NCBI GenBank assembly: GCA_039096225.1 | Contig: JBBPEB010000006.1 | Location: 620,001 to 684,000 of the forward strand | Origin: Blastocystis sp. Blastoise | Taxonomy: Eukaryota; Protista; Bigyra: Opalinata | Length of the DNA stretch: 64,000 nucleotides | Direction: 5' to 3' | Shown: positions 38,997-63,909 of the stretch, one piece after another | Layout of the letters: every line of letters begins with the position of its first letter | Position numbering within the stretch: position 1 is the first letter of the stretch | Translations under genes and position numbers: made by a program | Notes under the pieces: model-generated | What the model was told of the DNA's origin: nothing | The model's input: the letters and a program-made list of their open reading frames with translations, nothing else | The model's database searches: none

Positions 38997-39068
38997 GCCT
39001 GGTTAGCTCAGCGGTAGAGCGCTTGACTTTTAATCCAGTGGTCAGGGGTTCGATCCCCCTATCAGGCG
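38997..39068 (+). tRNA. tRNA-Lys(UUU)
   Basis: Cloverleaf: acceptor GCCTGGT/ATCAGGC, D arm GCTC/GAGC, anticodon loop CTTTTAA, T arm AGGGG-TTCGATC-CCCCT, discriminator G. One U-C mismatch in the anticodon stem. Confidence 0.95.
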
Positions 39069-39078
39069 TTTCTTTTTT
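39069..39078 (+). terminator. Pol III terminator T-run, repeated at 47661-47670 and 56252-56261
   Basis: TTTCTTTTTT immediately follows the tRNA 3' end. Confidence 0.75.
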
Positions 39079-39097
39079 ACATTTTTTTTATATCCTC

Positions 39098-42000
39098 ATG
39101 CAATCAGCAATCCATTTTAGTAACAACGGTGAAGTTCCGGAGTCAAAACTCCAAGTTGATCTGAAGATCAGAGATAAATCTGGGTCTACGAACCTGGCGT
39201 CTTCTTCTGCTCCTAGCCCTAGCGATGAGAACAGTTTACAGATAAACGAGAAACGAATTAAATCTGTGGAAGATGAGAAAAACGAAAAACAAAAAAATTA
39301 TGATGAAAATGGTGATCCAAGATCAAAATTGGTTTTTTCCGGATTTGAAATCCCACAAAACTCCGAGTTCTCCCGTGATTCTACTACTACTAAAATAGAT
39401 CCTCAAAATAAACAAGATTATTCTTTAAATACTAAAGAATTAATAGACTTATCTCTTACTGGTTCAACTACTACAACTACAAACAATTCTTCTAACTGGG
39501 TACTTTCTGAAAGTGATACCCTCTACGTAGATACTACTTCCTCGGCTAAGAAACGAATTATGTCTCCAGATATCTACACAATACAAGTCTATTCGAAAAA
39601 GAGTGGATACTCCTTTGAACCCTCCTCTTGACTCTTCTCTACAAGTGAATTCTGAACCTTTGAAACCTTCTACTGAAAATACTTCTGAAAAGAAAGATGA
39701 ATCTTGGTCTTCTACTGGTTGGTCTTCTGATGCCTTTGCTAAGTCTTGGTCTACTAATGTAAACATTTGGATTGATTATGATGATCCTAAACAAAACGTG
39801 AAATCTACTCAAAAATCTACTACCAATCTTGGACTTCCTACACAAAATACGACTCTAAATCAACAAAATGATGTACCTATGGTTATTTCGGTGGCTACAA
39901 ACACTCTTAATGAAAATTCTACTACTATTATTTCTTCTAATGCGTTATCTACTCCTGAAAATGTGTCCTCTACAAAAGAATCCCTGTTGAACAATTCTAC
40001 TAACGAATCTACTAATTTATCTATTATTTCTACTCATGAAAATATTCCTACTGTTAACATTACACAATCTAATTCTACTGTTTTAAATACTTCTGAATCT
40101 ACTAATTTAATGAATTCTTCTAATGCTATTGATTCTTCTGCTTTTGTTGATTCTACTAATTCTATTTATTCTTCTGCTTCTATGGTTTCTTCTAATGCTC
40201 TTGATTCTTCTGCTCCTATGGATTCTTCTTTTTCTATGGATTCTTCTGATTCTATAAACTCTCCTGATGCTATAAATTCTCCTGAATCTTCTGATTCTCC
40301 TCCTACTCCTACACTTAGTCAATTACTACACAATAGAATATTCCCAAATGATACGAATCCTCCTTCTTGGGCAAGAAATCCTACACTAGAACTATCTCCT
40401 TCTTTATCTACATCTTCAAATACTACTATAATAGATACTGCTACAATTACAAATAATACTCCTATTGGAAATGAAATTATTCATCCTTCTATACAAACTA
40501 CCTCCCTTTTATCCTCTGAAGATGAACCTATTTCTATCAATTTAAATAATACCGAACAAGAGGATCAAGATATATATACGAATTCTGATTCTAATATAGA
40601 AATACCTATACTTACTCCTAATGATATAATAGATGAAAATGAGATTCCTACAAATGAAACTATACTAAATACTATTGAAAATAATGAATTTATTCTTTCT
40701 TTTCCTACTAATATATATACTATTACTTCTCCTCCTAAAGATTTTCCTACTAAATTTAATTGGCTTTTCCCGGCAAAACCTGAATTTCTAATTGGTTATA
40801 ACACAATAAAAAAACATAAAAATGGAAAGAAATGGAATAATATAGAATCCTTAAAGGAATTTATAAATCACTTCACTTTAATGTTTATCTACGAGAAAAG
40901 AAAAAATAGGCCTAGAATTCAAAAAAGAATTACCCGCCAAAAAGCATTCTCCATGTTATTCCCTCAGTCAAGTGTGAATACACTGTTCTACTTACTACGA
41001 ACTCTCAGAAATATTTATTCAAATAAACATAGAAATTCTAGTGCTCCAATAAATGAAGTAGCGAAACAAAATGAAATCCCTATACAAGAAAGAATAACTC
41101 CAAGTGATACAACAAATAACTATATACAAAATGAAATTGAGGATAATACACATACTAATATGGGTACCTTTTTATCTCCTGTTCCTTCTGATTCTATAAC
41201 TACTATTGAACCTACTATTCCTTCTATCTCAAATTCTATAATTAATTCTAATTCTATTCCTATACATATTTCTTCTTCTTCTACAAATACTACAAATAAT
41301 ATTGATACTCCTATTATCATGAATACTACTATAAATCCAGATGATCATACTATAATAGAATCTTCTATATCTATAGAATCTCCTATTACAGTCAATATTT
41401 CTTCTACTATAGAATCTCCTATATCTATAGAATCTCCTTCTAATATAGATTCAACAAACTTATCTTCTTCTATGAATATAGATCAAATAAATACCAATAT
41501 AATAAACAATACTATTATATCTTCTCCTTCTATAAATAATACTCAATTGTCTCCTAATAGTTCTATAGAAAATATAGATATGGAATTAGATATAGATATT
41601 AATAGTATTCCTTCTACTTTGAATACTATCGATTCTAATACAAATAATATTAATCAGCAAAAGGAATCTATCCATAAGGATTTAGTAAATAATACTATGA
41701 ATATTACTACAAACAAGGAGATTACTACATCTATAACTAATGAAGAAGAAAATACACAAAATAAGAGAAATACTATTAATCTTGATGAAACTAATACTCA
41801 AATGAATAATACAACTACAATACAGAATCGAAATGAATACTATGATGTATCTTCTGATGAATCGATAATTAATATTTCTTCTACATCCACTTCAACTACT
41901 ACCTCTCCTATGAATTCTCCTATTCCTCTTGAAAATCATATAAGTCTCTCGAATATAGATTTTAATTTTACTCCACTTAATTCTACTCAAAAAGACATAA

Positions 42001-45000
42001 ATGGATCTAAGAAGACTACTACAGAAACTACTACTACTATAGAAACTACTACTACTCCTCTTCCTATCAATACGAATGAAATTTTAAACAATAATAATAC
42101 TATAGATATTGATATAGATATAGATCAAAACATGAGTAATTCTGAAACAAATACTCCTATGAATACTATGGAAATACAAGAAGAAATAGCTTCTACTACT
42201 ATGAATACTAATAATGATACTATGATGGATATTGAATCTTCTAATACTCAAGAAAATACTTCTACAAATAATTCAACTCAAAAGAATAAAAAGAATTCTA
42301 CACAAAAAGGAAATAGAAATAAGAATACTAAGAATAAATCAAAATATGATGATTATATAAAGGCTCCTCGAATTCCTAATACTGAAGATCTCCTTTCTAC
42401 TTACTCTCCTATTAATATTCAGAAAACTATACAATTCTCAAAAACTATCAAAGTAGATAATACTCCTAAAAGACGACTTTCTTCCATGGCTATACATAAA
42501 TTAGGAAATTGGAAAAGTTTCATTAGATTTAACAAATTTATAGAAGATAAACTCATACCTCTTGTTACTCCTTTCCCTAACTCCTCTGATGAATCGAATA
42601 CTATACAGATGAATAACGAAATGATTAATTCCTTCAATAATATATGTGATTATATTCAAAATGAACTCTATAATTGGATATATAATAATTCTACTCCTAC
42701 TTATAGATCTTGGCGTAATAATAATCTCAATAACAACAGTTCTATTAAGAAATATAATACTATATACAGAAAGAATAATAGTTATTCTCCTTCTCAAAGG
42801 AATAACTATAATGATAAGAATTCTTCAAATAAATATTCTTATGCTGGAAAAAATAGAAATAGCAATTCATATAGATCAAATAACCAATATAGAAACTTAA
42901 AGAAAACATATACTAGAAAGAATAATCAATATAGAAAGAAGTATATGGATATGCATGATATTTCTCAAAATAATCGCGGTTATGGTCAAAATCAAAACTA
43001 TACTGGTTCTTCTCCTAATAATCTTCAGAATACTACTAATAATACGGATGCTATGAATACTCATGATATTTCTCAGAATAATCATGGGAATACTCAAAAT
43101 CGATATGATACTCAAAATATTCCTGGAAATAATCATGATTATAATCAACATAGATATAATAGAAGAAAGAATAATTATAATCATCCTATAAACAATTATA
43201 GTAATAAAAACAAATATAAAAAGAATAAAAAATATAAGAACTATATGGATTTAAGTCCTTCTACTACTACTACTACTAATCGATCTACTACTATAAATGG
43301 TACTACTCCCTCTACTGATACTACTTCTCCTTCTACTGCTTCTCCTCCTACTACTTCCCCTCCTCCTACTACTACTACTCCTACTAATAATACTAACACT
43401 ATACATATGAATAATAATTTCAAACAAACGAATGATGATTTCTTTGATAATAATCCTTTCAGAAAATCTACGGATAATGAAATTGAAGCTTTAAAGAAAT
43501 ACTATAATAATCTAAAAAGTAATCTAGATACTCTAAAATACGATTTGAATCATACTATATTACCTAATATTCCTGAAACTGAATCCTATACTATCTCTTC
43601 TACTCTTTCTGAGTCTATCCTTAATTGGAAAAATAAACTACAATCTATTACACTCTTTGATGAAGATGAAGAATTAAAAATAAATATATTAAATATCTTA
43701 CAGAAAGATAATGAAAATAATAATACTCCTCTACTTACTCTAGAACAATGGAAAGAGATATTAAATCTTATAATGAATGAGATAGAATCATGCTTATGGA
43801 ATATTAACCAACTTAAAGAAGCTAAAATAAGAATTACTTCTATTAATGATGCTAAGAAAATACAATCCGAATTTGATAAGAATACTAAAGCTTTCTTAAG
43901 AAGTAAAGTATTCTCTAAAACTACTCCTAGATATTGTGAAATACCTTCTAAGGATTTACAAGAACAATTTACGAAACTATATGATTCACAAGAAACTTCA
44001 GATAATATATTACTTCCAGATATTATAAAATCAAATACTAAACAATTACTAAATCCTCCTGCCCTTAATAAGATAACCTATGAAAGAATTAGACATGCAT
44101 TAAAATTTTTACCAAATAACAGTACTCCTGGTCCTAATGGTCTCCCTTATGAAGTTTACAAATACTCCTCTTCTGCTTGTTCTCTATTGGCTTATATATT
44201 AGAAATATGTCGTTCGAATGGTATTACTCTAAAATCTTGGAGTTCCTCTATCACTTGCCTACTAGACAAAAATAAATCGGATCCTAGTAGCTTAGGAAAC
44301 TGGAGACCTTTGGCTTTACAAAATACTGAATCAAAAATACTTTCTTCTATAATGGTTACCTACATGAATGAACTAAACAATAAACAAAACTTTATGTCAA
44401 AATATCAAAAAGGATTTATATCTGGAATACCTGGTTGTGAAGAACTTAATTTCATACTACAAAACTACATAGCTAACTTTAAACTATCTAGAAGAGCTAA
44501 AACTGCTGCCTATTTTACTTTCCTCGACTTGGAGAAGGCCTATGATACGGTACCTCAAAGATTAATGCATCAAATTCTTCAATATATGAACTTCCCTATA
44601 GACTTCAGAAATATTATTCTATCCTTATACTCTTCTGCTAATACTGTTATAAGATTAACCAAAAATTCATATACAGATCCTATATACTTAAAGCGTGGAA
44701 TAAGACAAGGTGATCCCCTATCTCCTCTTCTATTCAATATTATACTTAATCCTTTATTGAATTACCTGAACAATAATCAAGCCATGATGATGAATATTAA
44801 AGATAACACTACTCCTAATAATCCTATTGTTATATCAGAAAGTAATGCTTATGCTTATGCAGATGATATCGTCCTGCTAGCTAACAATAAAGAAGATACG
44901 GAAGTTCTTTTAGGAAAGGTAAAAGAAATACTTAATATATATCATATGAAACTATCGGTTAATAAATGTAAGTGTTTAGCGATGAAATATTCCAATGATG

Positions 45001-46805
45001 GAAATAGAAAACTTACGTATACTCCTCCTCCTCCTACTTATAATAATGAAGTGATTACTCTACTTAAAGATACTGAAATCCAAAGATATTTAGGATGTCC
45101 TATGGGTGAATCCATTACTAAACGAAGAGAATTCTGGGTGAATACGTTAGATGAAATCAAAGAAAAAATAAATTCTTTAAATACTATTCCTATTAGTCCT
45201 CATCAAAAATTAATAACTCTTCGTCAATATATTATTCCTTGTATTGAATTCTTGGCTAGAAATGGTGATACTAATATACTTAAAATAAAAGAACTGGATG
45301 TACTAATAAGAAATAATGTTAAGAATTGGAATGGATGTTCTTCTGTCTGGCCTAAAGACTTTTATAGCACTTCAATACGAGATGGTGGACTTGGTGTTAC
45401 TTCGTTGTTAGATAGGTACTATATTGGTAAAGCTTCTCTACTGGTAAGAATGGCTAATTCAAATGATATAAATATTAGAAATACTTTATATTATGCTCTT
45501 AGATATACTACTCTACAAAATTCTCTATATGTGATTAATGATCCAATAAACTATATGAGAGGCCATATTCCTACTGAAATCCCTGAAACTAGAAAGAAAG
45601 ATTTGGTATTCTTTAATCTATCTATCAACAATATTAACAAACCCTTAAAAGCAAAGAAAGAAAATAATACTATTATTCCTCTAGATATAGACTTTACTAC
45701 ACTGAACCATCCCTTCCCTTATATAAGAAAAGCAATTGATGCTATAGTTGCTTTAAACATGGACATATGTTACTATGAAAATAATCCGAAAAATGGAGCT
45801 GGAATAAGAATAAGAAGTACTGATAATAGTATATCGAAATTTATAGAAGCGAAAGATGTGAAACGTAAGATGTGTAAATTATTAAATGAATCTTTGAAAA
45901 TAAGACATGCTTCTATGCTGAAAGAATACTCCTATTTGCAATATACTAAATATTTGAATAATAATATATCGTGTAACAAATGGATATACAAAACAAAACA
46001 TATTAATCCTTCAAAATACTGTGCCTTATTGAATCTTCGAATGAGAACCCTATATACTGGTGAGATGGCTTATAGAAGACAAGATCCGAAAGGAAAGAAA
46101 CCTACTCTACATGATACTGTCGCTTTATGTCCTTATTGTTTGAAAACTAAAAATGAATCAAGAATACATAGTCAAACACACATCATGACTACTTGTGCTA
46201 GAATCTCTAGAAATGAAAATGGACACGATCTGATTAGCAAAAGACATAATGAAATACGAGAATGTTTAACTAGATCTTTGGCAAAAGCTCTTCCTTATAC
46301 TATTTATAAAGTCAATCAAGAAAAATCAATGAATACTATTCTATATGATGGTAAGAATAAAGAGGAATGGGCTAATCGTCGTCCAGATATTATAATTACA
46401 AGTGAGAAAGAAATAAGAATGGTAGAAATTGGTGTTACTTATGAACAAGTAGATGGAACTCGTGATACTATCTTAGAAATGAAACATACTAAAGATCATT
46501 CATATGATGAAGCTATACAAAAATTACAACATGATTTCCCTAATAAACAAATCTCCTACTATACTGTTATACTTGGTGCCTCTGGGACAATTCCTGAATC
46601 TACTATTCATAATATATCTCAAGTCTCAAAACTCAAAGGAAGATACTTATACTTTTTAATATCAAAAATTAATGATATAGTCTTAGAATGGGCCTATAAG
46701 TATTGGAGACTATCTCTTTCTGATTCTAGACTAATTACAAAAAATATTTCTAGACTACATTCTTCTGCTGCTCATATTGAACTAACTCAACGAAATATTG
46801 AATAA
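39098..46805 (+). pseudogene. Retrotransposon ORF copy 1, with a +1 frameshift near the N-terminus (real or sequencing error)
   Basis: An extra A at 39568 (TCTCCAGATAT versus TCTCCGATAT in copy 2) splits the ORF into 39098-39631 and 39603-46805. Confidence 0.75.
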
Positions 46806-47636
46806 TATATATTACTATATGGAATAATATATACTACTAATTATCCTCTATAATACTTCTATTCATCCTCCATATACTATATTGAATATACTACTTCTAC
46901 TTATACTATATTGATGAAATTTATCTACTACTTATCCTCTACATATTACAATGGATATTATATTAATAATTCTACTTTATATTATACTTACTATATATAT
47001 CTACTCCCTATCCTCTATATATTATATTGGATATATTACTTTTACTTGATTTTATAATTTACTACTTTTTATATATATCTTTTTATTGAAATCTTTTCTT
47101 TATATCTTATTCTAATTCTATTTAATGAAAACTTATTTATACTGATTGAATTTATAATCAGCTCTGATTGAATATCTATATATTTATAGATTGAATTTTC
47201 TCTTTTTCTCTTACTTACTATTTATTAAACTCTTATCTTAAAAATATTACTTAAAAAATTATTCTACTACTTATTAACCTTTAATATTAATTAAATCAAT
47301 TAAATTATATTAATTACATATATATAGTCGTGATATGAAAGGTATATTGTACCTATACATCAGCTATATCCCAGAAATGCTTGGGAGGTGTTAAAATTGT
47401 GTTACTAGATCTGGTATCAGTACACAAATCCCATTCAGAGAGTCCTATTGGTTATTTTAAGGTGCATATGAAATACATGTGTTGTGATATCCCCGTGGTA
47501 AAACATACTTAAACAAAACAAAATGAACAAAAGTTATTAAATGATATTTTAAATTTATTTTAATTTTTTTATGTTCTTTTTCTGTTTGTGTACCGTTCTC
47601 TCTGGTACAAATGGTTACTTTAATTGGCTAACACTT

Positions 47637-53600: not shown

Positions 53601-56227
53601 AACTTACGTATACTCCTCCTCCTCCTACTTATAATAATGAAGTGATTACTCTACTTAAAGATACTGAAATCCAAAGATATTTAGGATGTCCTATGGGTGA
53701 ATCCATTACTAAACGAAGAGAATTCTGGGTGAATACGTTAGATGAAATCAAAGAAAAAATAAATTCTTTAAATACTATTCCTATTAGTCCTCATCAAAAA
53801 TTAATAACTCTTCGTCAATATATTATTCCTTGTATTGAATTCTTGGCTAGAAATGGTGATACTAATATACTTAAAATAAAAGAACTGGATGTACTAATAA
53901 GAAATAATGTTAAGAATTGGAATGGATGTTCTTCTGTCTGGCCTAAAGACTTTTATAGCACTTCAATACGAGATGGTGGACTTGGTGTTACTTCGTTGTT
54001 AGATAGGTACTATATTGGTAAAGCTTCTCTACTGGTAAGAATGGCTAATTCAAATGATATAAATATTAGAAATACTTTATATTATGCTCTTAGATATACT
54101 ACTCTACAAAATTCTCTATATGTGATTAATGATCCAATAAACTATATGAGAGGCCATATTCCTACTGAAATCCCTGAAACTAGAAAGAAAGATTTGGTAT
54201 TCTTTAATCTATCTATCAACAATATTAACAAACCCTTAAAAGCAAAGAAAGAAAATAATACTATTATTCCTCTAGATATAGACTTTACTACACTGAACCA
54301 TCCCTTCCCTTATATAAGAAAAGCAATTGATGCTATAGTTGCTTTAAACATGGACATATGTTACTATGAAAATAATCCGAAAAATGGAGCTGGAATAAGA
54401 ATAAGAAGTACTGATAATAGTATATCGAAATTTATAGAAGCGAAAGATGTGAAACGTAAGATGTGTAAATTATTAAATGAATCTTTGAAAATAAGACATG
54501 CTTCTATGCTGAAAGAATACTCCTATTTGCAATATACTAAATATTTGAATAATAATATATCGTGTAACAAATGGATATACAAAACAAAACATATTAATCC
54601 TTCAAAATACTGTGCCTTATTGAATCTTCGAATGAGAACCCTATATACTGGCGAGATGGCTTATAGAAGACAAGATCCGAAAGGAAAGAAACCTACTCTA
54701 CATGATACTGTCGCTTTATGTCCTTATTGTTTGAAAACTAAAAATGAATCAAGAATACATAGTCAAACACACATCATGACTACTTGTGCTAGAATCTCTA
54801 GAAATGAAAATGGACACGATCTGATTAGCAAAAGACATAATGAAATACGAGAATGTTTAACTAGATCTTTGGCAAAAGCTCTTCCTTATACTATTTATAA
54901 AGTCAATCAAGAAAAATCAATGAATACTATTCTATATGATGGTAAGAATAAAGAGGAATGGGCTAATCGTCGTCCAGATATTATAATTACAAGTGAGAAA
55001 GAAATAAGAATGGTAGAAATTGGTGTTACTTATGAACAAGTAGATGGAACTCGTGATACTATCTTAGAAATGAAACATACTAAAGATCATTCATATGATG
55101 AAGCTATACAAAAATTACAACATGATTTCCCTAATAAACAAATCTCCTACTATACTGTTATACTTGGTGCCTCTGGGACAATTCCTGAATCTACTATTCA
55201 TAATATATCTCAAGTCTCAAAACTCAAAGGAAGATACTTATACTTTTTAATATCAAAAATTAATGATATAGTCTTAGAATGGGCCTATAAGTATTGGAGA
55301 CTATCTCTTTCTGATTCTAGACTAATTACAAAAAATATTTCTAGACTACATTCTTCTGCTGCTCATATTGAACTAACTCAACGAAATATTGAATAATATA
55401 TATTACTATATGGAATAATATATACTACTAATTATCCTCTATAATACTTCTATTCATCCTCCATATACTATATTGAATATACTACTTCTACTTATACTAT
55501 ATTGATGAAATTTATCTACTACTTATCCTCTACATATTACAATGGATATTATATTAATAATTCTACTTTATATTATACTTACTATATATATCTACTCCCT
55601 ATCCTCTATATATTATATTGGATATATTACTTTTACTTGATTTTATAATTTACTACTTTTTATATATATCTTTTTATTGAAATCTTTTCTTTATATCTTA
55701 TTCTAATTCTATTTAATGAAAACTTATTTATACTGATTGAATTTATAATCAGCTCTGATTGAATATCTATATATTTATAGATTGAATTTTCTCTTTTTCT
55801 CTTACTTACTATTTATTAAACTCTTATCTTAAAAATATTACTTAAAAAATTATTCTACTACTTATTAACCTTTAATATTAATTAAATCAATTAAATTATA
55901 TTAATTACATATATATAGTCGTGATATGAAAGGTATATTGTACCTATACATCAGCTATATCCCAGAAATGCTTGGGAGGTGTAAAAATTGTGTTACTAGA
56001 TCTGGTATCAGTACACAAATCCCATTCAGAGAGTCCTATTGGTTATTTTAAGGTGCATATGAAATACATGTGTTGTGATATCCCCGTGGTAAAACATACT
56101 TAAACAAAACAAAATGAACAAAAGTTATTAAATGATATTTTAAATTTATTTTAATTTTTTTATGTTCTTTTTCTGTTTGTGTACCGTTCTCTCTGGTACA
56201 AATGGTTACTTTAATTGGCTAACACTT
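47637..56227 (+). mobile_element. RLE-type non-LTR retrotransposon, copy 2 (8,591 bp), apparently intact
   Basis: Head-to-tail with copy 1 and has the same 5' tRNA fragment and 3' end. Confidence 0.95.
47690..55396 (+). CDS. 2,568-aa retrotransposon polyprotein: low-complexity N-terminus, reverse transcriptase, CCHC zinc knuckle, restriction-like endonuclease
   Basis: RT motifs TPGPNG, NWRPLAL, QKGF, FLDLEKAYDTV, GIRQGDPLSPLLFNI, AYADD (YADD at 53447), RYLG and GGLG. Then CPYC...HIMTTC, KRHNEI and RPDIII...VEIGVTY (PD-(D/E)xK-like). Confidence 0.95.
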   Translation: MQSAIHFSNNGEVPESKLQVDLKIRDKSGSTNLASSSAPSPSDENSLQINEKRIKSVEDEKNEKQKNYDENGDPRSKLVFSGFEIPQNSEFSRDSTTTKIDPQNKQDYSLNTKELIDLSLTGSTTTTTNNSSNWVLSESDTLYVDTTSSAKKRIMSPISTQYKSIRKRVDTPLNPPLDSSLQVNSEPLKPSTENTSEKKDESWSSTGWSSDAFAKSWSTNVNIWIDYDDPKQNVKSTQKSTTNLGLPTQNTTLNQQNDVPMVISVATNTLNENSTTIISSNALSTPENVSSTKESLLNNSTNESTNLSIISTHENIPTVNITQSNSTVLNTSESTNLMNSSNAIDSSAFVDSTNSIYSSASMVSSNALDSSAPMDSSFSMDSSDSINSPDAINSPESSDSPPTPTLSQLLHNRIFPNDTNPPSWARNPTLELSPSLSTSSNTTIIDTATITNNTPIGNEIIHPSIQTTSLLSSEDEPISINLNNTEQEDQDIYTNSDSNIEIPILTPNDIIDENEIPTNETILNTIENNEFILSFPTNIYTITSPPKDFPTKFNWLFPAKPEFLIGYNTIKKHKNGKKWNNIESLKEFINHFTLMFIYEKRKNRPRIQKRITRQKAFSMLFPQSSVNTLFYLLRTLRNIYSNKHRNSSAPINEVAKQNEIPIQERITPSDTTNNYIQNEIEDNTHTNMGTFLSPVPSDSITTIEPTIPSISNSIINSNSIPIHISSSSTNTTNNIDTPIIMNTTINPDDHTIIESSISIESPITVNISSTIESPISIESPSNIDSTNLSSSMNIDQINTNIINNTIISSPSINNTQLSPNSSIENIDMELDIDINSIPSTLNTIDSNTNNINQQKESIHKDLVNNTMNITTNKEITTSITNEEENTQNKRNTINLDETNTQMNNTTTIQNRNEYYDVSSDESIINISSTSTSTTTSPMNSPIPLENHISLSNIDFNFTPLNSTQKDINGSKKTTTETTTTIETTTTPLPINTNEILNNNNTIDIDIDIDQNMSNSETNTPMNTMEIQEEIASTTMNTNNDTMMDIESSNTQENTSTNNSTQKNKKNSTQKGNRNKNTKNKSKYDDYIKAPRIPNTEDLLSTYSPINIQKTIQFSKTIKVDNTPKRRLSSMAIHKLGNWKSFIRFNKFIEDKLIPLVTPFPNSSDESNTIQMNNEMINSFNNICDYIQNELYNWIYNNSTPTYRSWRNNNLNNNSSIKKYNTIYRKNNSYSPSQRNNYNDKNSSNKYSYAGKNRNSNSYRSNNQYRNLKKTYTRKNNQYRKKYMDMHDISQNNRGYGQNQNYTGSSPNNLQNTTNNTDAMNTHDISQNNHGNTQNRYDTQNIPGNNHDYNQHRYNRRKNNYNHPINNYSNKNKYKKNKKYKNYMDLSPSTTTTTNRSTTINGTTPSTDTTSPSTASPPTTSPPPTTTTPTNNTNTIHMNNNFKQTNDDFFDNNPFRKSTDNEIEALKKYYNNLKSNLDTLKYDLNHTILPNIPETESYTISSTLSESILNWKNKLQSITLFDEDEELKINILNILQKDNENNNTPLLTLEQWKEILNLIMNEIESCLWNINQLKEAKIRITSINDAKKIQSEFDKNTKAFLRSKVFSKTTPRYCEIPSKDLQEQFTKLYDSQETSDNILLPDIIKSNTKQLLNPPALNKITYERIRHALKFLPNNSTPGPNGLPYEVYKYSSSACSLLAYILEICRSNGITLKSWSSSITCLLDKNKSDPSSLGNWRPLALQNTESKILSSIMVTYMNELNNKQNFMSKYQKGFISGIPGCEELNFILQNYIANFKLSRRAKTAAYFTFLDLEKAYDTVPQRLMHQILQYMNFPIDFRNIILSLYSSANTVIRLTKNSYTDPIYLKRGIRQGDPLSPLLFNIILNPLLNYLNNNQAMMMNIKDNTTPNNPIVISESNAYAYADDIVLLANNKEDTEVLLGKVKEILNIYHMKLSVNKCKCLAMKYSNDGNRKLTYTPPPPTYNNEVITLLKDTEIQRYLGCPMGESITKRREFWVNTLDEIKEKINSLNTIPISPHQKLITLRQYIIPCIEFLARNGDTNILKIKELDVLIRNNVKNWNGCSSVWPKDFYSTSIRDGGLGVTSLLDRYYIGKASLLVRMANSNDINIRNTLYYALRYTTLQNSLYVINDPINYMRGHIPTEIPETRKKDLVFFNLSINNINKPLKAKKENNTIIPLDIDFTTLNHPFPYIRKAIDAIVALNMDICYYENNPKNGAGIRIRSTDNSISKFIEAKDVKRKMCKLLNESLKIRHASMLKEYSYLQYTKYLNNNISCNKWIYKTKHINPSKYCALLNLRMRTLYTGEMAYRRQDPKGKKPTLHDTVALCPYCLKTKNESRIHSQTHIMTTCARISRNENGHDLISKRHNEIRECLTRSLAKALPYTIYKVNQEKSMNTILYDGKNKEEWANRRPDIIITSEKEIRMVEIGVTYEQVDGTRDTILEMKHTKDHSYDEAIQKLQHDFPNKQISYYTVILGASGTIPESTIHNISQVSKLKGRYLYFLISKINDIVLEWAYKYWRLSLSDSRLITKNISRLHSSAAHIELTQRNIE

Positions 56228-59200
56228 GGGGTTCGATCCCCCTATCAGGCGTTTCTTTTTTACATTTTATTTTTATCCTCATGCAATCAGCAATCCAAAT
56301 AAGTAACAATGCTTCTGTTCCGGAGTCAAAACTCCAACATGATCTTTTACAATCAGTTGATAAAGGTCAGAATTCTTCCGTTTCTTCTTCTGTGTGTGCT
56401 AGAGAAGATGATAAGATGATTAGTGATGAAGGAAATACTCAAGAATTCCTTGGGGCTTCAAAAAATCAAAAACAAATAAAATATGCTCAGAATGGTCTTC
56501 CAATTCAGGAAAAAGAGAATTTCTCCGGATGTGAAATCCCAGGAAATTCCGAAGCCTCCCGTGGTTCTTCTATTACTTTGAAAGATCCACCAAATAATAA
56601 CGGTTATTTACAACCCAAAAATAATCCTGAAAAGGATATTTCTTCTTCTACATCTATCTCTACAACTACATTACCTCTACACAACCAGAACAGTCCTATA
56701 CCTCTAGAAACTGAAGTCTTCTACATTGAAACTTCTACACTTGCGAAAAAGAGAAAGATGTCTCCTGTATGTACTGATTTTATGAGTTTAAGAAAGAAGA
56801 AAGATGGTGATGAACTTGTTGAACCTACTATGTCTACAAAGGATGCTGTAAACTCTCTATCTACGAAAAATGATGATACTACGAAAAAGAATGATTGGAA
56901 TTTCTCCTCTACTAAAACTTCATGGTCCTCGAACTACTCTGTGCAAAGCTCTTGGTCTACTGATATCAATATTTGGATTGATTATGATGATCCTCGAAAT
57001 ACTATGAAACCTACTTCTACATTCTCTATGAACTTTGGTACTACGAATGACGAAACTACTACAATACCCTTAGATGAATCTAATACTATGAATGAAACTA
57101 CTATGAATCCCTCTATGAATGAAACGACTCAGAATCTACAAGAAATTATTCCTAATTCCTCTCAAAGTAAAGAAATACGAAATGAAAATGAAATGAAAGA
57201 TGTTTTGATGAATACTGAAGAAAACAATGTGATCAATATTGATACAACAGTAGTTGATGTGAATGATAAAATGGATGATGAAATACAAAAAAGTAATATA
57301 AATATAGAATTGAATGAAAACAATATTGATAACTCTATGAACGAAAATACCCCTAGTGAATCTTCAAATTCTCCAGAATCTTCTAATTCTCCTCCTACTC
57401 CCACACTTAGTCAATTATTACATCAAAGAATATTCCCAAATGATACAAATCCTCCTTCTTGGGCTCAAAATAATAATATATCTACATTGGAATTGTCTTC
57501 TTCATCATCTACAAACACTTCAATAAATACTTCTATAAATACTAATAATAATACTTTGTTAACTACTAATAATCAATCAAATGATATACAACATAATTCT
57601 TCTTTATCTTCTGAAGATGAATTAATTACAATGAACTTAAGTGATGAAGAACAGGAATCCTCTTATGATACTTTAGATGATATACATACCTATACTCCTA
57701 ATGAAATACTTGGTGAATATGAAATTCCTACTATTGATAATATACTTGAAACTACTCATGGAAATAATTTCAATATTCTATTACCTACTAATATATATAC
57801 TATTACTTCTCCTCCTACAAATTTTCCTACTAAATTTAATTGGCTTTTCCCGGCAAAACCTGAATTTCTAATTGGTTATAACACAATAAAAAAACATAAA
57901 AATGGAAAGAAATGGAATAATATAGAATCCTTAAAGGAATTTATAAATCACTTCACTTTAATGTTTATCTACGAGAAAAGAAAAAATAGGCCTAGAATTC
58001 AAAAAAGAATTACCCGCCAAAAATCATTCTCCATGTTATTCCCTCAGTCAAGTGTAAATACACTGTTCTACTTACTACGAACTCTCAGAAATATTTATTC
58101 AAATAAACATAGAAATTCTAGTGCTCCAATAAATGAAGTAGCGAAACAAAATGATATCCCTATTAAAGAAAGAATAACTCCAAGTGATACAACAAATAAC
58201 TATATACAAAATGAAATTGATGATAATACACATACTAATATGGGTACCTTTTTATCTCCTGTTCCTTCTGATTCTATAACTACTATTGAACCTACTATTC
58301 CTTCTATTTCAAATTCTATAATTAACTCTAATTCTATTCCTATACATATTTCTTCTTCTTCTACAAATACTACAAATAATATAGATACTCCTATTATCAT
58401 GAATACTACTATAAATCCAGATGATCATACTATTATAGAATCTCCTATATCTATAGAATCTCCTATTACAGTCAATCTTTCTTCTACTATAGAATCTCCT
58501 ATATCTATAGAATCTCCTTCTAATATAGATTCAACAAACTTATCTTCTTCTATGAATATAGAGCAAATAAATACCAATATAACAAAAAATACTATTATAT
58601 CTTCTCCTTCTATAAATAATACTCAATTGTCTCCTAATAATTCTATGGAAAATATAGATATGGAATTAGATATAGATATTAATAGTATTCCTTCTACTTT
58701 GAATACTATTGATTCTAATACAAATAATATTAATCAGCAAAAGGAATCTATTCATAAGGATTTAGTAAATAATACTATGAATATTACTACAAACAAGGAA
58801 ATTGCTACATCTATAGCTAATGAAGAAGAAAATATACAAAATAAGAGAAATACTATTAATCTTGATACAACTAATACTCAAATAAATAATACAACTACAA
58901 TACAGAATCAAAATGAATACTATGATATATCTTCTGATGAATCGATAATTAATATCTCTTCTATGTCCACTTCAACTACTACCTCTCCTATGAATTCTCC
59001 TATTCCTCTTGAAAATCATATAAGTCTCTCTACTATAGATTTTAATTTTACTCCTATTATTTCTACTCAAAAAGATACAAATGAATCTAAGAAAACTACT
59101 ACAGAAACAACTACTACTATAGAAACTACTACTACTTCTCTTCCTATCAATACGAATGAAATTATAAACAATAATAATACTATAGATATTGATATAGATA

Positions 59201-62200
59201 TAGATCAAAATATGAATAATTCTGAAACAAATAGTCCTATGAATACTATGGAAATACAAGAAGAAATAGCTTCTACTACTATGAATACTAATAATGATAC
59301 TATGATGGATATTGAATCTTCTAATACTCAAGAACAAACTTTTACAAATAATTCAACTCAAAAGAATAAAAAGAATTCTACACAAAAAGGAAATAAAAAT
59401 AAGAATAATAAGAATAAATCAAAATATGATGATTATATAAAGGCTCCTCGAATTCCTAATACTGAAGATCTCCTTTCTACTTACTCTCCTATTAATATTC
59501 AGAAAACTATACAATTCTCAAAAACTATCAAAGTAGATAATACTCCTAAAAGACGACTTTCTTCTATGGCTATACATAAATTAGGAAATTGGAAAAGCTT
59601 TATTAGATTTAACAAATTTATAGAAAACAAATTGATACCTCTTGTTACTCCTTTCCCTATCTCCTCTGATGAACCGAATACTATACAGATGAATAATGAA
59701 ATGATTAATTCCTTCAATAATATATGTGATTATATTCAAAATGAACTTTATAACTGGATATATAATAATTCTATTCCTACTTATAGATCTTGGCATGATA
59801 ATAATCTCAATAACAATAGTTCTACTAAGAAATACAACACTATATATAGAAAGAATAATAGATATTCTCCTTCTCAAAAGAATAGTTATAATGATAAGAA
59901 TTCTTCAAATAAATACTCTTATGCTGGAAAGAATAATAAGAATAGAAATGGCAATTCATATAGATCAAATAACCAATATAGAAACTCAAAGAAAACATAT
60001 ACTAGAAAGAATAATCAATATAGAAAGAAGTATATGAATACTCATGATATTTCTCAAAATAATCGCGGTTATGGTCAAAATCGAAGTCATATTGATTCTA
60101 CTCCTAATAATCTTCAGAATACTACTAATAATATGGATGATATGGATACGCATGATATTTCTCAAAATAATCACGGGAATACTCAAAATCGATATGATAC
60201 TCAAAATATTCCTGGAAATAATCATGATTATAATCAACATAGATATAATAGAAGAAAGAATAATTATAATCATCCTATAAACAATTATAGTAATAAAAAT
60301 AAATATAAAAAGAATAATAATTATAAGAACTATATGGATTTAAGTCCTTCTACTAATAACAATAATACTACTACTACTAATCGATCTACTACTATAAATG
60401 GTACTACTCCCTCTACTAATGTTACTACTTCTACTACTTCTCCTCCTCCTACTACTACTACTCCTACTAATAATACGAACACTATACATATGAATAATAA
60501 TTTCAAACAAACGAATGATGATTTCTTTGATAATAATCCTTTCAGAAAATCTACGGATAATGAAATTGAAGCTTTAAAGAAATACTATAATAATCTAAAA
60601 AGTAATCTAGATACTCTAAAATACGATTTGAATCATAATATAATACCTAATATTCCTGAAACTGAATTATATACTATCTCTTCTACTCTTTCTGAGTCTA
60701 TCCTTAATTGGAAAAATAAACTACAATCTATTACACTCTTTGATGAAGATGAAGAATTAAAAATAAATATATTAAATATCTTACAGAAAGATAATGAAAA
60801 TAATATTACTCCTCTACTTACTCTAGAACAATGGAAAGAGATATTAAATCTTATAATGAATGAGATAGAATCATGCTTATGGAATATTAACCAACTCAAA
60901 GAAGCTAAAATAAGAATTACTTCTATTAATGATGCAAAGAAAATACAATCTGAATTTGATAAGAATACTAAAGCTTTCCTAAGAAGTAAAGTATTCTCTA
61001 AAACTACTCCTAGATATTGTGAAATACCTTCTAAGGATTTACAAGAACAATTTACGAAACTATATGATTCACAAGAAACTTCAGATAATATATTACTTCC
61101 AGATATTATAAAATCAAATACTAAACAATTACTAAATCCTCCTGCCCTTAATAAGATAACCTATGAAAGAATTAAACACGCATTAAAATTTTTACCAAAT
61201 AACAGTACTCCTGGTCCTAATGGTCTCCCTTATGAAGTATACAAATACTCCTCTTCTGCTTGTTCTCTATTGGCTTATATATTAGAAATATGTCGTTCGA
61301 ATGGTATTACTCTAAAATCTTGGAGTTCCTCTATCACTTGCCTACTAGACAAAAATAAATCGGATCCTAGTAGCTTAGGAAACTGGAGACCTTTGGCTTT
61401 ACAAAATACTGAATCAAAAATACTTTCTTCTATAATGGTTACTTACATGAATGAACTAAACAATAAACAAAACTTTATGTCAAAATATCAAAAAGGATTT
61501 ATATCTGGAATACCTGGTTGTGAAGAACTTAATTTCATACTACAAAACTACATAGCTAATTTTAAACTATCTAGAAGAGCTAAAACTGCTGCCTATTTTA
61601 CTTTCCTTGACTTGGAGAAGGCCTATGATACGGTACCTCAAAGATTAATGCATCAAATTCTTCAATATATGAACTTCCCTATAGACTTCAGAAATATTAT
61701 TCTATCCTTATACTCTTCTGCTAATACTGTTATAAGATTAACCAAAAATTCATATACAGATCCTATATACTTAAAGCGTGGAATAAGACAAGGTGATCCA
61801 CTATCTCCTCTTCTATTCAATATCATACTTAATCCTTTATTGAATTACCTGAACAATAATCAAGCTATGATGATGAATATTAAAGATAACACTACTCCTA
61901 ATAATCCTATTGTTATATCAGAAAGTAATGCTTATGCTTATGCAGATGATATTGTCCTACTAGCTAACAATAAAGAAGATACGGAAGCTCTTTTAGGAAA
62001 GGTAAAAGAAATACTTAATATATATCATATGAAACTATCGGTTAATAAATGTAAGTGTTTAGCGATGAAATACTCCAATGATGGAAATAGAAAACTTACT
62101 TATACTCCTCCTCCTCCTACTTATAATAATGAAGTGATTACTCTACTTAAAGATACTGAAATTCAAAGATATTTAGGATGTCCTATGGGTGAATCAATTA

Positions 62201-63909
62201 CTAAACGAAGAGAATTCTGGGTGAATACGTTAGATGAAATCAAAGAAAAAATAAATTCATTAAACACAATTCCTATTAGTCCTCATCAAAAATTAATAAC
62301 TCTTCGTCAATATATTATTCCTTGTATTGAATTCTTGGCTAGAAATGGTGATACTAATATACTTAAAATAAAAGAACTGGATGTACTAATAAGAAATAAT
62401 GTTAAGAATTGGAATGGATGTTCTTCTGTCTGGCCTAAAGACTTTTATAGCACCTCAATACGAGATGGTGGACTTGGTGTTACTTCGTTGTTAGATAGGT
62501 ATTATATTGGTAAAGCTTCTCTACTGGTAAGAATGGCTAATTCAAATGATATAAATATTAGAAATACTTTATATTATGCTCTTAGATATACTACTCTACA
62601 AAATTCTCTATATGTGATTAATGATCCAATAAACTATATGAGAGGCCATATTCCTACTGGAATCCCTGAAAATAGAAAGAAAGATTTGGTATTCTTTAAT
62701 CTATCTATCAACAACATTAACAAACCCTTAAAAGCAAAGAAAGAAAATAATACTGTTATTCCTCTAGATATAGACTTTACTACACTGAACCATCCCTTCC
62801 CTTATATAAGAAAAGCTATTGATGCTATAGTTGCGTTAAACATGGACATATGTTACTATGAGAATAATCCGAAAAATGGAGCTGGAATAAGAATAAGAAG
62901 TACTGATAATAGTATATCGAAATTTATAGAAGCGAAAGATGTGAAACGTAAAATGTGCAAATTATTAAATGAATCTTTGAAAATAAGACATGCTTCTATG
63001 CTGAAAGAATACTCCTATTTACAATATACTAAATACTTAAATAATAATATATCGTGTAATAAATGGATATACAAAACAAAACATATTAATCCTTCAAAAT
63101 ACTGTGCCTTATTGAATCTTCGAATGAGAACCCTATATACTGGTGAGATGGCTTATAGAAGACAAAATCCAAAAGGAAAGAAACCTACTCTACAGGATAC
63201 TGTCGCTTTATGTCCTTATTGTTTGAAAACTAAAAATGAATCAAAAATACATAGTCAAACCCACATCATGACTACCTGTGCTAGAATCTCTAGAAATGAA
63301 AATGGACACGATCTGATTAGCAAAAGACATAATGAAATACGAGAATGTTTAGCTAGATCTTTGGCAAAAACTCTTCCTTATACTATTTTTAAAGTCAATC
63401 AAGAAAAATCAATGAATACTATTCTATATGATGGTAAGAATAAAGAACAATGGGCTAATCGGCGTCCAGATATTATAATTACAAGTGAGAAAGAAATAAG
63501 AATGGTAGAAATTGGTGTTACTTATGAACAAGTAGATGGAACTCGTGATACTCTCTTAGAAATGAAACATACTAAAGATCATTCATATGATGAAGCTATA
63601 CAAAAATTACAACATGATTTCCCTAATAAACAAATCTCCTACTATACTGTTATACTTGGTGCTTCTGGGACAATTCCTGAATCTACTATTCATAATATAT
63701 CTCAAGTTTCAAAACTCAAAGGAAGATATCTTTACTTCTTAATATCAAAAATTAATGATATAGTCTTAGAATGGGCCTATAAGTATTGGAGACTATCTCT
63801 TTCTGATTCTAGACTAATTACAAAAAATATTTCTAGACTACATTCTTCTGCTGCTCATATTGAATTAACTCAACGAAATATGGAATAATATATTATATTA
63901 ATTATATTA
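56228..63909 (+). mobile_element. RLE-type non-LTR retrotransposon, copy 3 (variant); 3' UTR interrupted
   Basis: Same 24-nt tRNA 3' fragment at its 5' end and an intact ORF. The sequence departs from the copy 1/2 3' UTR within about 20 nt of the stop codon. Confidence 0.93.
56281..63888 (+). CDS. 2,535-aa retrotransposon polyprotein (RT, CCHC, RLE), variant
   Basis: Same catalytic motifs as copy 2. The first ~500 aa are strongly diverged. Confidence 0.95.
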   Translation: MQSAIQISNNASVPESKLQHDLLQSVDKGQNSSVSSSVCAREDDKMISDEGNTQEFLGASKNQKQIKYAQNGLPIQEKENFSGCEIPGNSEASRGSSITLKDPPNNNGYLQPKNNPEKDISSSTSISTTTLPLHNQNSPIPLETEVFYIETSTLAKKRKMSPVCTDFMSLRKKKDGDELVEPTMSTKDAVNSLSTKNDDTTKKNDWNFSSTKTSWSSNYSVQSSWSTDINIWIDYDDPRNTMKPTSTFSMNFGTTNDETTTIPLDESNTMNETTMNPSMNETTQNLQEIIPNSSQSKEIRNENEMKDVLMNTEENNVINIDTTVVDVNDKMDDEIQKSNINIELNENNIDNSMNENTPSESSNSPESSNSPPTPTLSQLLHQRIFPNDTNPPSWAQNNNISTLELSSSSSTNTSINTSINTNNNTLLTTNNQSNDIQHNSSLSSEDELITMNLSDEEQESSYDTLDDIHTYTPNEILGEYEIPTIDNILETTHGNNFNILLPTNIYTITSPPTNFPTKFNWLFPAKPEFLIGYNTIKKHKNGKKWNNIESLKEFINHFTLMFIYEKRKNRPRIQKRITRQKSFSMLFPQSSVNTLFYLLRTLRNIYSNKHRNSSAPINEVAKQNDIPIKERITPSDTTNNYIQNEIDDNTHTNMGTFLSPVPSDSITTIEPTIPSISNSIINSNSIPIHISSSSTNTTNNIDTPIIMNTTINPDDHTIIESPISIESPITVNLSSTIESPISIESPSNIDSTNLSSSMNIEQINTNITKNTIISSPSINNTQLSPNNSMENIDMELDIDINSIPSTLNTIDSNTNNINQQKESIHKDLVNNTMNITTNKEIATSIANEEENIQNKRNTINLDTTNTQINNTTTIQNQNEYYDISSDESIINISSMSTSTTTSPMNSPIPLENHISLSTIDFNFTPIISTQKDTNESKKTTTETTTTIETTTTSLPINTNEIINNNNTIDIDIDIDQNMNNSETNSPMNTMEIQEEIASTTMNTNNDTMMDIESSNTQEQTFTNNSTQKNKKNSTQKGNKNKNNKNKSKYDDYIKAPRIPNTEDLLSTYSPINIQKTIQFSKTIKVDNTPKRRLSSMAIHKLGNWKSFIRFNKFIENKLIPLVTPFPISSDEPNTIQMNNEMINSFNNICDYIQNELYNWIYNNSIPTYRSWHDNNLNNNSSTKKYNTIYRKNNRYSPSQKNSYNDKNSSNKYSYAGKNNKNRNGNSYRSNNQYRNSKKTYTRKNNQYRKKYMNTHDISQNNRGYGQNRSHIDSTPNNLQNTTNNMDDMDTHDISQNNHGNTQNRYDTQNIPGNNHDYNQHRYNRRKNNYNHPINNYSNKNKYKKNNNYKNYMDLSPSTNNNNTTTTNRSTTINGTTPSTNVTTSTTSPPPTTTTPTNNTNTIHMNNNFKQTNDDFFDNNPFRKSTDNEIEALKKYYNNLKSNLDTLKYDLNHNIIPNIPETELYTISSTLSESILNWKNKLQSITLFDEDEELKINILNILQKDNENNITPLLTLEQWKEILNLIMNEIESCLWNINQLKEAKIRITSINDAKKIQSEFDKNTKAFLRSKVFSKTTPRYCEIPSKDLQEQFTKLYDSQETSDNILLPDIIKSNTKQLLNPPALNKITYERIKHALKFLPNNSTPGPNGLPYEVYKYSSSACSLLAYILEICRSNGITLKSWSSSITCLLDKNKSDPSSLGNWRPLALQNTESKILSSIMVTYMNELNNKQNFMSKYQKGFISGIPGCEELNFILQNYIANFKLSRRAKTAAYFTFLDLEKAYDTVPQRLMHQILQYMNFPIDFRNIILSLYSSANTVIRLTKNSYTDPIYLKRGIRQGDPLSPLLFNIILNPLLNYLNNNQAMMMNIKDNTTPNNPIVISESNAYAYADDIVLLANNKEDTEALLGKVKEILNIYHMKLSVNKCKCLAMKYSNDGNRKLTYTPPPPTYNNEVITLLKDTEIQRYLGCPMGESITKRREFWVNTLDEIKEKINSLNTIPISPHQKLITLRQYIIPCIEFLARNGDTNILKIKELDVLIRNNVKNWNGCSSVWPKDFYSTSIRDGGLGVTSLLDRYYIGKASLLVRMANSNDINIRNTLYYALRYTTLQNSLYVINDPINYMRGHIPTGIPENRKKDLVFFNLSINNINKPLKAKKENNTVIPLDIDFTTLNHPFPYIRKAIDAIVALNMDICYYENNPKNGAGIRIRSTDNSISKFIEAKDVKRKMCKLLNESLKIRHASMLKEYSYLQYTKYLNNNISCNKWIYKTKHINPSKYCALLNLRMRTLYTGEMAYRRQNPKGKKPTLQDTVALCPYCLKTKNESKIHSQTHIMTTCARISRNENGHDLISKRHNEIRECLARSLAKTLPYTIFKVNQEKSMNTILYDGKNKEQWANRRPDIIITSEKEIRMVEIGVTYEQVDGTRDTLLEMKHTKDHSYDEAIQKLQHDFPNKQISYYTVILGASGTIPESTIHNISQVSKLKGRYLYFLISKINDIVLEWAYKYWRLSLSDSRLITKNISRLHSSAAHIELTQRNME

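What the first reader, a model, noticed from the sequence alone, without database searches (positions are those of the whole stretch)
38997..63909. tRNA-Lys-targeting R2-type retrotransposon that regenerates its target tRNA and stacks head-to-tail
Seen: three RT+CCHC+RLE elements begin at the same base of the tRNA-Lys(UUU) T-stem, with GGGGTTCGATCCCCCTATCAGGCG followed by TTTCTTTTTT at 39045, 47637 and 56228. Before copy 1 this fragment completes an intact tRNA gene. Before copies 2 and 3 it is fused to the previous element's 3' end (...TAACACTT|GGGG). Known: RLE elements are site-specific for multicopy genes (R2/R4 rDNA, CRE/SLACS/NeSL spliced leader, Utopia U2 snRNA) and tRNA-internal targets are uncommon among them. 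Restoring a tRNA 3' end is the strategy of phage/ICE tyrosine integrases. Inference: the endonuclease nicks at A39044|G39045, and either a >=24-bp target duplication or an element-borne tRNA 3' end rebuilds the gene and terminator. Insertion would then be harmless and the site reusable, with the newest copy nearest the tRNA. The farthest copy being the diverged, Helitron-hit one fits this. It is a candidate new family and a possible safe-harbour gene-writing system.
Basis: partly seen in the sequence, partly recalled or inferred. Interest (0 to 1): 0.93.

Follow-up and report, generated by a model that had tools for sequence, protein, structure and literature searches.

The report
tRNA-Lys-specific retrotransposon that spares its tRNA
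An 8.6-kb R2/NeSL-type jumping gene of a tortoise-gut Blastocystis inserts at one exact base of tRNA-Lys(UUU) genes but duplicates the tRNA's last 24 bases, so a whole tRNA gene survives in front of it, can be hit again, and has built dated head-to-tail stacks at five of the six gene copies.

Summary
The window (Blastocystis sp. Blastoise, contig C14) has one tRNA-Lys(UUU) gene followed by three head-to-tail 8.6-kb units. Each unit starts with the tRNA's last 24 nt and encodes a ~2,570-aa protein with RT, CCHC and restriction-like endonuclease.

Genome-wide:
- Five of six tRNA-Lys(UUU) genes carry such an array.
- All 11 element 3' ends abut the same base (A49|G50 of the tRNA).
- No copy lies at an unrelated site.
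- Eight copies are 99.9-100% identical.
- A derived SNP marks the tRNA-proximal copy in both arrays that hold both variants, and older subfamily copies lie distal. The stacks therefore grew at the tRNA end by separate insertions.

Distant relatives on metagenome contigs show the same layout behind tRNA-Pro, Arg, Ile and Asn genes. That favours a staggered-cut target duplication of 24-35 bp over an element-borne fragment.

tRNA-specific NeSL-group elements and long duplications are already published (Kojima & Jurka 2015). I call this a new variant of a known kind: a duplication that restores the whole tRNA gene.

This scan already found the sister tRNA-Phe family on other DNA of this genome. 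Read-level checks of the arrays and of expression were not possible.

The parts
38997..39068 (+). Complete tRNA-Lys(UUU) gene at the head of the array. Its last 24 nt (39045-39068) are the first copy of the duplicated fragment.
   Evidence: ARAGORN. The 5' part is identical at all six genomic loci.
39069..47636 (+). Element copy 1, young subfamily, 8,568 bp after the fragment. It begins with a T-run leader, has its ATG at 39098, carries a +1 frameshift near 39568, and ends ...AACACTT.
47637..47660 (+). Orphan 24-nt tRNA 3' fragment between copies 1 and 2.
47661..56227 (+). Element copy 2, young subfamily. It has an uninterrupted ORF from ATG 47690 to stop 55396 (2,568 aa) and a 3' UTR at 55397-56227.
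52868..53686 (+). Reverse transcriptase domain of copy 2.
   Evidence: Pfam RVT_1, E 3e-32. The best PDB matches are R2 proteins, E 6e-41.
54719..55084 (+). C-terminal CCHC knuckle followed by the restriction-like endonuclease motifs (RHN, PD, E, K) of copy 2.
   Evidence: Translation, motif scan, and second aligned stretch to the R2 endonuclease.
56228..56251 (+). Orphan 24-nt tRNA 3' fragment between copies 2 and 3.
56252..63893 (+). Element copy 3, older subfamily B. The ORF runs from ATG 56281 to stop 63888. The first ~530 aa are only 16-48% identical to the young subfamily and the rest is 90-100% identical. The copy continues outside the window to C14:696852.
63894..64000 (.). Start of a 12.3-kb insertion in the 3' UTR of copy 3. 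It opens with a GC-rich palindrome and holds a Helitron Rep/PIF1 ORF just beyond the window.

Best explanation
This is a family of site-specific non-LTR retrotransposons of the restriction-like-endonuclease kind (R2/NeSL group). It is specific for tRNA-Lys(UUU) genes.

Shown:
- The element's 3' end is always joined to G50 of the tRNA.
- A complete tRNA gene always stands in front of the array.
- An orphan copy of tRNA positions 50-73 stands behind every element.

Inferred mechanism:
1. The protein recognises the tRNA-Lys gene.
2. Its endonuclease nicks the antisense strand opposite A49|G50 in the T-stem.
3. The nick primes reverse transcription at the RNA's 3' end.
4. The sense strand is cut 24-35 nt downstream, at or just past the tRNA's end.
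5. Fill-in duplicates the T-arm 3' half, the acceptor 3' strand and perhaps the T-run.

The upstream copy is then a whole tRNA gene with A box, B box and a T-run terminator, so the host keeps the gene and the site can be used again. The downstream fragment lacks the upstream half of the site and is not reused. Arrays therefore grow only at the tRNA end, newest first.
For: - Specificity: only six tRNA-Lys(UUU) genes match. Five head an array. All 17 copies of the fragment are either in those tRNAs or directly behind an element end. A protein search finds the 11 family copies only in these arrays.
- Recent activity: eight copies are 99.9-100% identical, and seven have a full uninterrupted ORF.
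- Separate insertions: tandem copies on C13 differ at 6 sites. Each matches a copy at another locus, C13_1 with C29_1 and C13_2 with C33_1.
- Order of stacking: at element position 8348 all three old B copies have A. The derived T lies in the tRNA-proximal copy and the A in the distal copy on both C13 and C14. B copies are always distal.
- Empty site: the free tRNA-Lys gene on C1 has a downstream flank 96.5% identical over 1.5 kb to the flank after the last fragment on C10.
- Duplication rather than cargo: relatives at 22-31% identity sit behind complete tRNA-Pro, Arg, Ile and Asn genes. Each carries a repeat of its own tRNA's 3' end. In the two single-copy cases, L047 and L050, the repeat runs on into the T-run, at 27 and 19 nt.
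- Protein class: RVT_1 plus CCHC plus RHN/PD..E..K, with R2 proteins as best PDB hits.
Against: - The final DNA is the same whether the 24 nt come from a staggered cut or from the RNA, and all 17 copies are identical, so there is no direct discrimination.
- The boundary is ambiguous. The element's first 11 nt equal the one verified native trailer (C1/C10). An extra A sits exactly between fragment and leader at two B copies, on C29 and C23, and at the C33 tail. That points to a 24-bp duplication, whereas the relatives point to a duplication that includes the T-run.
- One array (C23) has no head tRNA. Its first copy starts at element position ~3915 after unrelated DNA.
- No cleavage, RNA or read data were available.
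- Whether the rebuilt tRNA genes are expressed was not tested.
Confidence: 0.8

Rival explanations
1. The element inserts just after the tRNA, between discriminator G73 and the T-run, and never breaks it. The 24-nt fragment is part of the element's own RNA 3' end, as with R2 read-through co-transcripts, and is copied at each event.
For: It gives exactly the DNA seen. All fragments are identical even behind old B copies. The extra A lies between the tRNA end and the leader, where a 5' junction would be in this model.
Against: At least five families with different tRNAs (Lys, Pro, Arg, Ile here, plus Phe per earlier scan notes) each carry a fragment of their own tRNA. In this model every change of target would need matched changes in RNA and protein. 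In L047 and L050 the repeat also covers 5-9 nt of trailer, which would need a second, separate duplication. The element end plus the fragment shows no significant tRNA-like fold (z -1.0) and no similarity to the tRNA 5' part (p 0.76). Relatives lack the partner strand for a T-stem.
Confidence: 0.15
2. The head-to-tail arrays were made by unequal crossing-over or local tandem duplication of a single insertion, or are an assembly artefact, rather than by repeated insertion.
For: Tandem copies are nearly identical. The two C10 copies differ at one site only. The arrays could not be checked against reads.
Against: On C13 and C14 the tandem copies differ from each other and match copies on other contigs. 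Subfamily B copies with a very different N-terminal third sit in the same arrays. Arrays exist at five loci with different flanks in a long-read assembly. Relatives from unrelated samples are also tandem (L051, L044).
Confidence: 0.05

Closest known systems
NeSL-group tRNA-specific elements: NeSL-1_TV (tRNA-Pro, Trichomonas), LIN15_SM (tRNA-Arg) and LIN25_SM (tRNA-Glu) of planaria (Kojima & Jurka 2015, PMC4640811)
   Same: Single-ORF non-LTR elements with RT, a C-terminal zinc knuckle and a restriction-like endonuclease. Each family is specific for one tRNA species, with a precise 3' junction inside the tRNA. The published LIN15_SM junctions imply a long duplication. A relative found here sits in tRNA-Pro(UGG).
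   Different: In the published planarian junctions the upstream copy is not a complete tRNA, and restoration of the gene is not described in the text I could read. Here the duplication reaches the tRNA's end, so a full gene plus terminator remains. The protein is twice as long, no N-terminal zinc finger or Ulp1 protease was found, and identity to anything outside this genome is at most 33%.
R2 (28S rDNA-specific RLE retrotransposon; R2Bm, R2Tg structures)
   Same: Best solved-structure matches (E 6e-41). Same RT-CCHC-RLE order, no poly(A) tail, precise 3' junction, target-primed reverse transcription at a multicopy RNA gene.
   Different: Different target. It falls outside the R2-named clade in the RT tree. 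No Myb or zinc-finger N-terminus and no HDV-like ribozyme hit. R2 inactivates its 28S unit, whereas here the gene is rebuilt.
Long target duplications in RLE elements: R9 of rotifers (126 bp; Gladyshev & Arkhipova 2009, cited in PMC13580325), reptile Utopia (20 bp; PMC4640811), SLACS (49 bp, from my own knowledge)
   Same: Widely staggered first- and second-strand cuts give duplications of tens of bases within a multicopy RNA gene. Tandem Utopia/U2 arrays are reported in Phytophthora.
   Different: Those duplications are not reported to restore a complete functional target gene. Here the downstream cut lies at or beyond the gene's end, so the whole gene is rebuilt.
tRNA-gene-adjacent retrotransposons guided by Pol III factors (Dictyostelium TRE5/TRE3, yeast Ty3; from my own knowledge and PMC5391098)
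   Same: They use tRNA genes as safe landing sites and leave the tRNA intact.
   Different: Those elements insert tens of bases up- or downstream of any tRNA gene by binding TFIIIB/TFIIIC, and they use APE or integrase enzymes. Here one tRNA species is used, at one base inside the gene, by an RLE element.
Phage and ICE tyrosine integrases that integrate into tRNA 3' ends
   Same: The outcome is the same: the tRNA 3' end is duplicated, so the gene stays whole.
   Different: A different enzyme and route (site-specific recombination with an element-borne attP copy), and found in prokaryotes. This is an analogy only.

Membership tests
RLE-bearing non-LTR retrotransposons (R2/NeSL/CRE/Hero group) | Single ORF with RT followed by a CCHC-type knuckle and a PD-(D/E)xK restriction-like endonuclease; no APE domain | tested here: met
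   RVT_1 E 3e-32 and no APE hit. A single CCHC at aa 2344-2366, then RHN, PD, E and K motifs. The C-terminus aligns to the R2 endonuclease.
RLE-bearing non-LTR retrotransposons (R2/NeSL/CRE/Hero group) | Site-specific insertion in a multicopy gene with an exact 3' junction | tested here: met
   11 of 11 3' ends are joined to G50 of tRNA-Lys(UUU), and 5 of 6 genes are occupied.
R2 clade proper | RT groups within R2 | tested here: not met
   In the FastTree of 77 RT domains the R2-named clade (SH 99) excludes it. It groups with two unnamed long RLE proteins (SH 97). No Repbase references were available.
R2 clade proper | 28S rDNA target; N-terminal zinc finger(s) and Myb; 5' HDV-like ribozyme | tested here: not met
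   The target is a tRNA. No Cys/His motif and no Pfam domain in the first 1,627 aa. No ribozyme family at E up to 1 in Rfam.
NeSL/Utopia clade | RT phylogeny with named NeSL or Utopia references | tested here: inconclusive
   No named references could be fetched. A Ulp1-bearing protein (P0123) and a tRNA-Pro-associated relative (P0117) fall in the same RLE superclade, but the branching is unresolved.
NeSL/Utopia clade | One to three N-terminal zinc fingers; Ulp1 protease in NeSL proper | tested here: not met
   Neither was found. The N-terminal 1,600 aa are mostly low-complexity. Two short helical islands folded with pLDDT 45 only.
Pol III-guided tRNA-adjacent elements (TRE5/TRE3, Ty3) | Insertion at a set distance outside any tRNA gene; APE or integrase enzyme | tested here: not met
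   The junction lies inside the gene, one tRNA species is used, and the enzyme is an RLE.

The most novel reading that the evidence does not exclude
A broad, unnamed clade of RLE retrotransposons, seen here behind Lys, Pro, Arg, Ile and Asn tRNA genes (and Phe by earlier notes), may need the intact tRNA gene for its own expression as well as for the host's benefit. In every family the ORF's ATG lies only 9-50 nt after the tRNA end, behind the T-run. The element RNA may therefore be made as a tRNA-linked transcript whose 5' end is set at +1 after the discriminator, for example by RNase Z. That would play the role the HDV-like ribozyme plays for R2. It would explain why the leader looks like a tRNA trailer, why an untemplated A sits exactly at that point, and why only the head copy stays active.
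Probability: 0.2. Interest if true: 0.8.

Novelty: new variant of a known kind. Interest (0 to 1): 0.6.

Why it matters
- **Cost to the host.** It shows how a retrotransposon can occupy nearly every copy of an essential, low-copy tRNA gene (5 of 6) at little apparent cost. The staggered cuts are placed so that the duplication rebuilds the gene.
- **A natural time series.** The rebuilt site is reusable, so the arrays are time-ordered stacks of insertions. This is rare for retrotransposons.
- **A wider group.** The same layout behind four other tRNA species in unrelated samples points to a wider, undescribed group with changeable tRNA specificity.
- **Second-strand cleavage.** The group is relevant to how RLE enzymes choose the second-strand cut.
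- **Targeted insertion.** Non-destructive target sites could in principle interest people who study targeted insertion.

Tried and rejected
- **Read support and expression:** The arrays and the RNA ends remain unchecked.
- **Sister tRNA-Phe family:** about ten copies at 47% aa identity on C4, C15 and C23. Its tRNA-Phe target rests on earlier scan notes only.
- **tRNA-like 3' end:** the last 97 nt plus the fragment fold into a cloverleaf-like shape, but not better than shuffles (z -1.0). The element end shows no similarity to the tRNA 5' part (p 0.76). Relatives lack a T-stem partner. Rejected.
- **HDV-like or other ribozyme at the junction:** nothing in Rfam at E up to 1 except a chance snoRNA hit.
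- **N-terminal DNA-binding domain:** no Pfam hit, no zinc-finger motif. Two single-sequence AlphaFold models had pLDDT 45, so no fold search was run.
- **Protein atlas:** only generic RT clusters.
- **JGI metagenome scan for the exact 3' junction:** no match.
- **IQ-TREE run:** timed out, so FastTree was used instead.
- **Captured 5' UTR with unrelated insertion sites:** rejected, because no such copy exists.
Full report
**1. Observation**

The window is C14:620001-684000 of a 33-Mb, 34-contig assembly. The encoded proteins are deposited as hypothetical proteins of Blastocystis sp. Blastoise.

- ARAGORN finds one tRNA, tRNA-Lys(UUU), at 38997-39068.
- Its last 24 nt recur exactly at 47637 and 56228, with none expected by chance.
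- At 39045 the fragment is part of the tRNA. At the other two places it follows ...AACACTT, the end of the preceding unit.
- The units are 8592 and 8591 bp apart.
- Each unit carries one long ORF with an RT domain, a single CCHC knuckle and RHN/PD..E..K endonuclease motifs.
- The best solved-structure matches are R2 proteins (E 6e-41). These score well above LINE-1 ORF2p (E ~1e-22). A second aligned stretch covers the R2 endonuclease.

**2. Genome-wide picture**

The 48-nt 5' part of this tRNA occurs six times at up to 3 mismatches, on C1, C10, C13, C14, C29 and C33. The 24-nt fragment occurs 17 times: six within those tRNAs and eleven directly behind an element end. Five of the six genes head an array, and only C1 is free.

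| Locus | Content after the tRNA |
|---|---|
| C1 | no element (empty gene) |
| C10 | young, young |
| C13 | young, young, then a ~110-nt fossil of an older element's 5' end |
| C14 | young, young, subfamily B with Helitron, then a fossil |
| C29 | young, B |
| C33 | young |

A sixth array on C23, near a contig end, holds a partial copy and a B-like copy but no head tRNA. A protein search of the whole genome finds the 11 copies of this family only in these arrays. It also finds about ten copies of a second family at 47% identity.

**3. Age and order**

The eight young copies differ at only nine alignment columns. Two patterns matter.

- C13 copy 1 and C29 copy 1 share a cluster of five changes. 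C13 copy 2 equals C33 copy 1. Tandem neighbours are therefore separate insertions of different master variants, not local duplicates.
- At element position 8348 all three B copies have A, which I take as ancestral. On both C13 and C14 the tRNA-proximal copy has the derived T and the distal copy has the A. B copies are always distal to young ones.

This also means the orphan fragments inside the arrays are not reused. That fits a recognition site that includes the upstream half of the tRNA.

**4. What is duplicated**

The free gene on C1 has a downstream flank that is 96.5% identical over 1.5 kb to the flank following the last fragment on C10. It gives a reference for the native trailer.

Compared with it, the filled locus has gained the element plus one extra copy of the 24 nt. 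The next 11 nt (TTTCTTTTTTA) are shared by the native trailer and the element's start. The duplication is therefore 24 to 35 bp.

Two observations pull in different directions.

- An extra A lies exactly between the fragment and the leader at the B copies on C29 and C23 and at the C33 tail. This is what an untemplated base at a 5' junction would look like. It places the junction right after G73, giving a 24-bp duplication with the T-run supplied by the element.
- In distant relatives the repeat runs on into the trailer (section 5). That suggests a second cut beyond the T-run.

Either way the upstream copy has A box, B box and a T-run.

**5. Relatives**

Outside this genome nothing exceeds 33% identity. 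In an RT tree the family joins two unnamed long RLE proteins (SH 97). It lies outside the R2-named clade (SH 99), within an unresolved RLE superclade. I read the contigs of several relatives.

| Contig | tRNA upstream | What follows |
|---|---|---|
| L047 | tRNA-Pro(UGG), complete | T-run, ATG after 17 nt; behind the element a 27-nt repeat of tRNA positions 55-72 plus 9 nt of trailer |
| L050 | tRNA-Arg(ACG), complete | 19-nt repeat of positions 60-73 plus five T |
| L051 | tRNA-Ile(GAU), complete | the tail fragment runs on into a second, diverged copy (tandem) |
| L052 | tRNA-Asn(GUU), complete | T-run and ATG |
| L045, L046 | not seen | the same tRNA 3' part at both contig ends |
| L049 | none | repeats something that is not a tRNA |
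| L044 | unclear | unclear |

So a wider group shares the plan: whole tRNA, T-run, ATG within 9-50 nt, then the element, then a copy of that tRNA's own 3' end. The first nick always lies in the T-arm. Each family carries a piece of its own target, and single-copy cases show one continuous repeat. A staggered-cut duplication is therefore more economical than an RNA-borne fragment.

**6. Mechanism proposed**

Shown: junction positions, target specificity, order of stacking and protein domains.

Inferred:
1. The antisense strand is nicked opposite A49|G50.
2. Reverse transcription is primed from that nick at the RNA's tail-less 3' end. The last 330 nt of the 3' UTR are 97-100% conserved between subfamilies.
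3. The sense strand is cut 24-35 nt downstream.
4. Fill-in completes the duplication.

How the RNA is made is unknown. The T-run between tRNA and ATG rules out a Pol III read-through message. The very short leader suggests that the tRNA gene supplies the promoter context or a processing site.

**7. Comparison with the literature**

- Kojima & Jurka 2015 (PMC4640811) report tRNA-Pro-specific NeSL-1_TV, tRNA-Arg- and tRNA-Glu-specific LIN families, 20-bp duplications in reptile Utopia, and tandem Utopia/U2 arrays.
- Their S6 figure shows LIN15_SM junctions that imply a long duplication but not a restored tRNA.
- R9 makes a 126-bp duplication (cited in PMC13580325).
- The genome paper for these Blastocystis strains does not mention retrotransposons or tRNA genes (PMC12129017).

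The kind is therefore known. The variant is new as far as I could search: a duplication placed so that the whole gene and terminator are rebuilt, occupancy of five of six copies of an essential tRNA, and dated stacks.

The scan itself has already reported the sister tRNA-Phe family on other DNA of this genome. I confirmed that a second family exists but not its target.

**8. Limits**

- No read or RNA evidence could be obtained.
- The sister family could not be fetched.
- No named clade references were available.
- The N-terminal 1,600 aa, which must hold the DNA-reading part, gave no domain or confident fold.

Noticed in passing
window 63894-64000, continuing to C14:696156 (L024:149-4825, minus strand): A 12.3-kb insertion in the 3' UTR of copy 3 holds a 1,559-aa Helitron Rep/PIF1 helicase ORF. 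It opens with a GC-rich palindromic stretch at about 63913-63960, of the kind other notes on this genome describe as highly iterated.
   Followed up: partly
C1:374852 onward (L017/L018) versus C10 flank after 52459 (minus strand): The flank downstream of the empty tRNA-Lys gene on C1 is 96.5% identical over at least 1.5 kb to the flank after the C10 array, while the upstream flanks are unrelated. This could be an old duplication or exchange whose breakpoint lies at the tRNA or array. The extent of the homology was not seen.
   Followed up: partly
window 47690-49280 versus 56281-57780: The first ~530 aa of the ORF are only 16-48% identical between the young and B subfamilies, while the remaining 2,000 aa are 90-100% identical. 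This is either a swapped or a very fast-evolving N-terminal module.
   Followed up: partly
window about 39568 (copy 1): The tRNA-proximal, youngest copy in this window has a one-base insertion that splits its ORF (39023-39631 and 39603-46805). It is not in a homopolymer run, so it is probably real.
   Followed up: partly
C13:636243-636360 and C14:696877-697010 (outside the window): Both arrays end with the fragment followed by about 110-130 nt of a much older element's 5' end (leader plus the first codons, motif VPESKLQ), then unrelated DNA. How 5'-only fossils arise is unexplained.
   Followed up: partly
C23:75354, C23:269708, C15:488267, C15:724039-747536, C4:1520613-1584167, C4:2409021-2422170: About ten copies of a second RLE family (47% aa identity in RT-RLE, ORFs up to 2,787 aa). 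Earlier scan notes assign it to tRNA-Phe genes.
   Followed up: no
L049 (ENA ERZ27245258 contig), 66 and 6152: A related long RLE element is flanked by a 23-nt repeat that is not a tRNA. It is GC-richer and contains a T7 run. The target is unknown.
   Followed up: no
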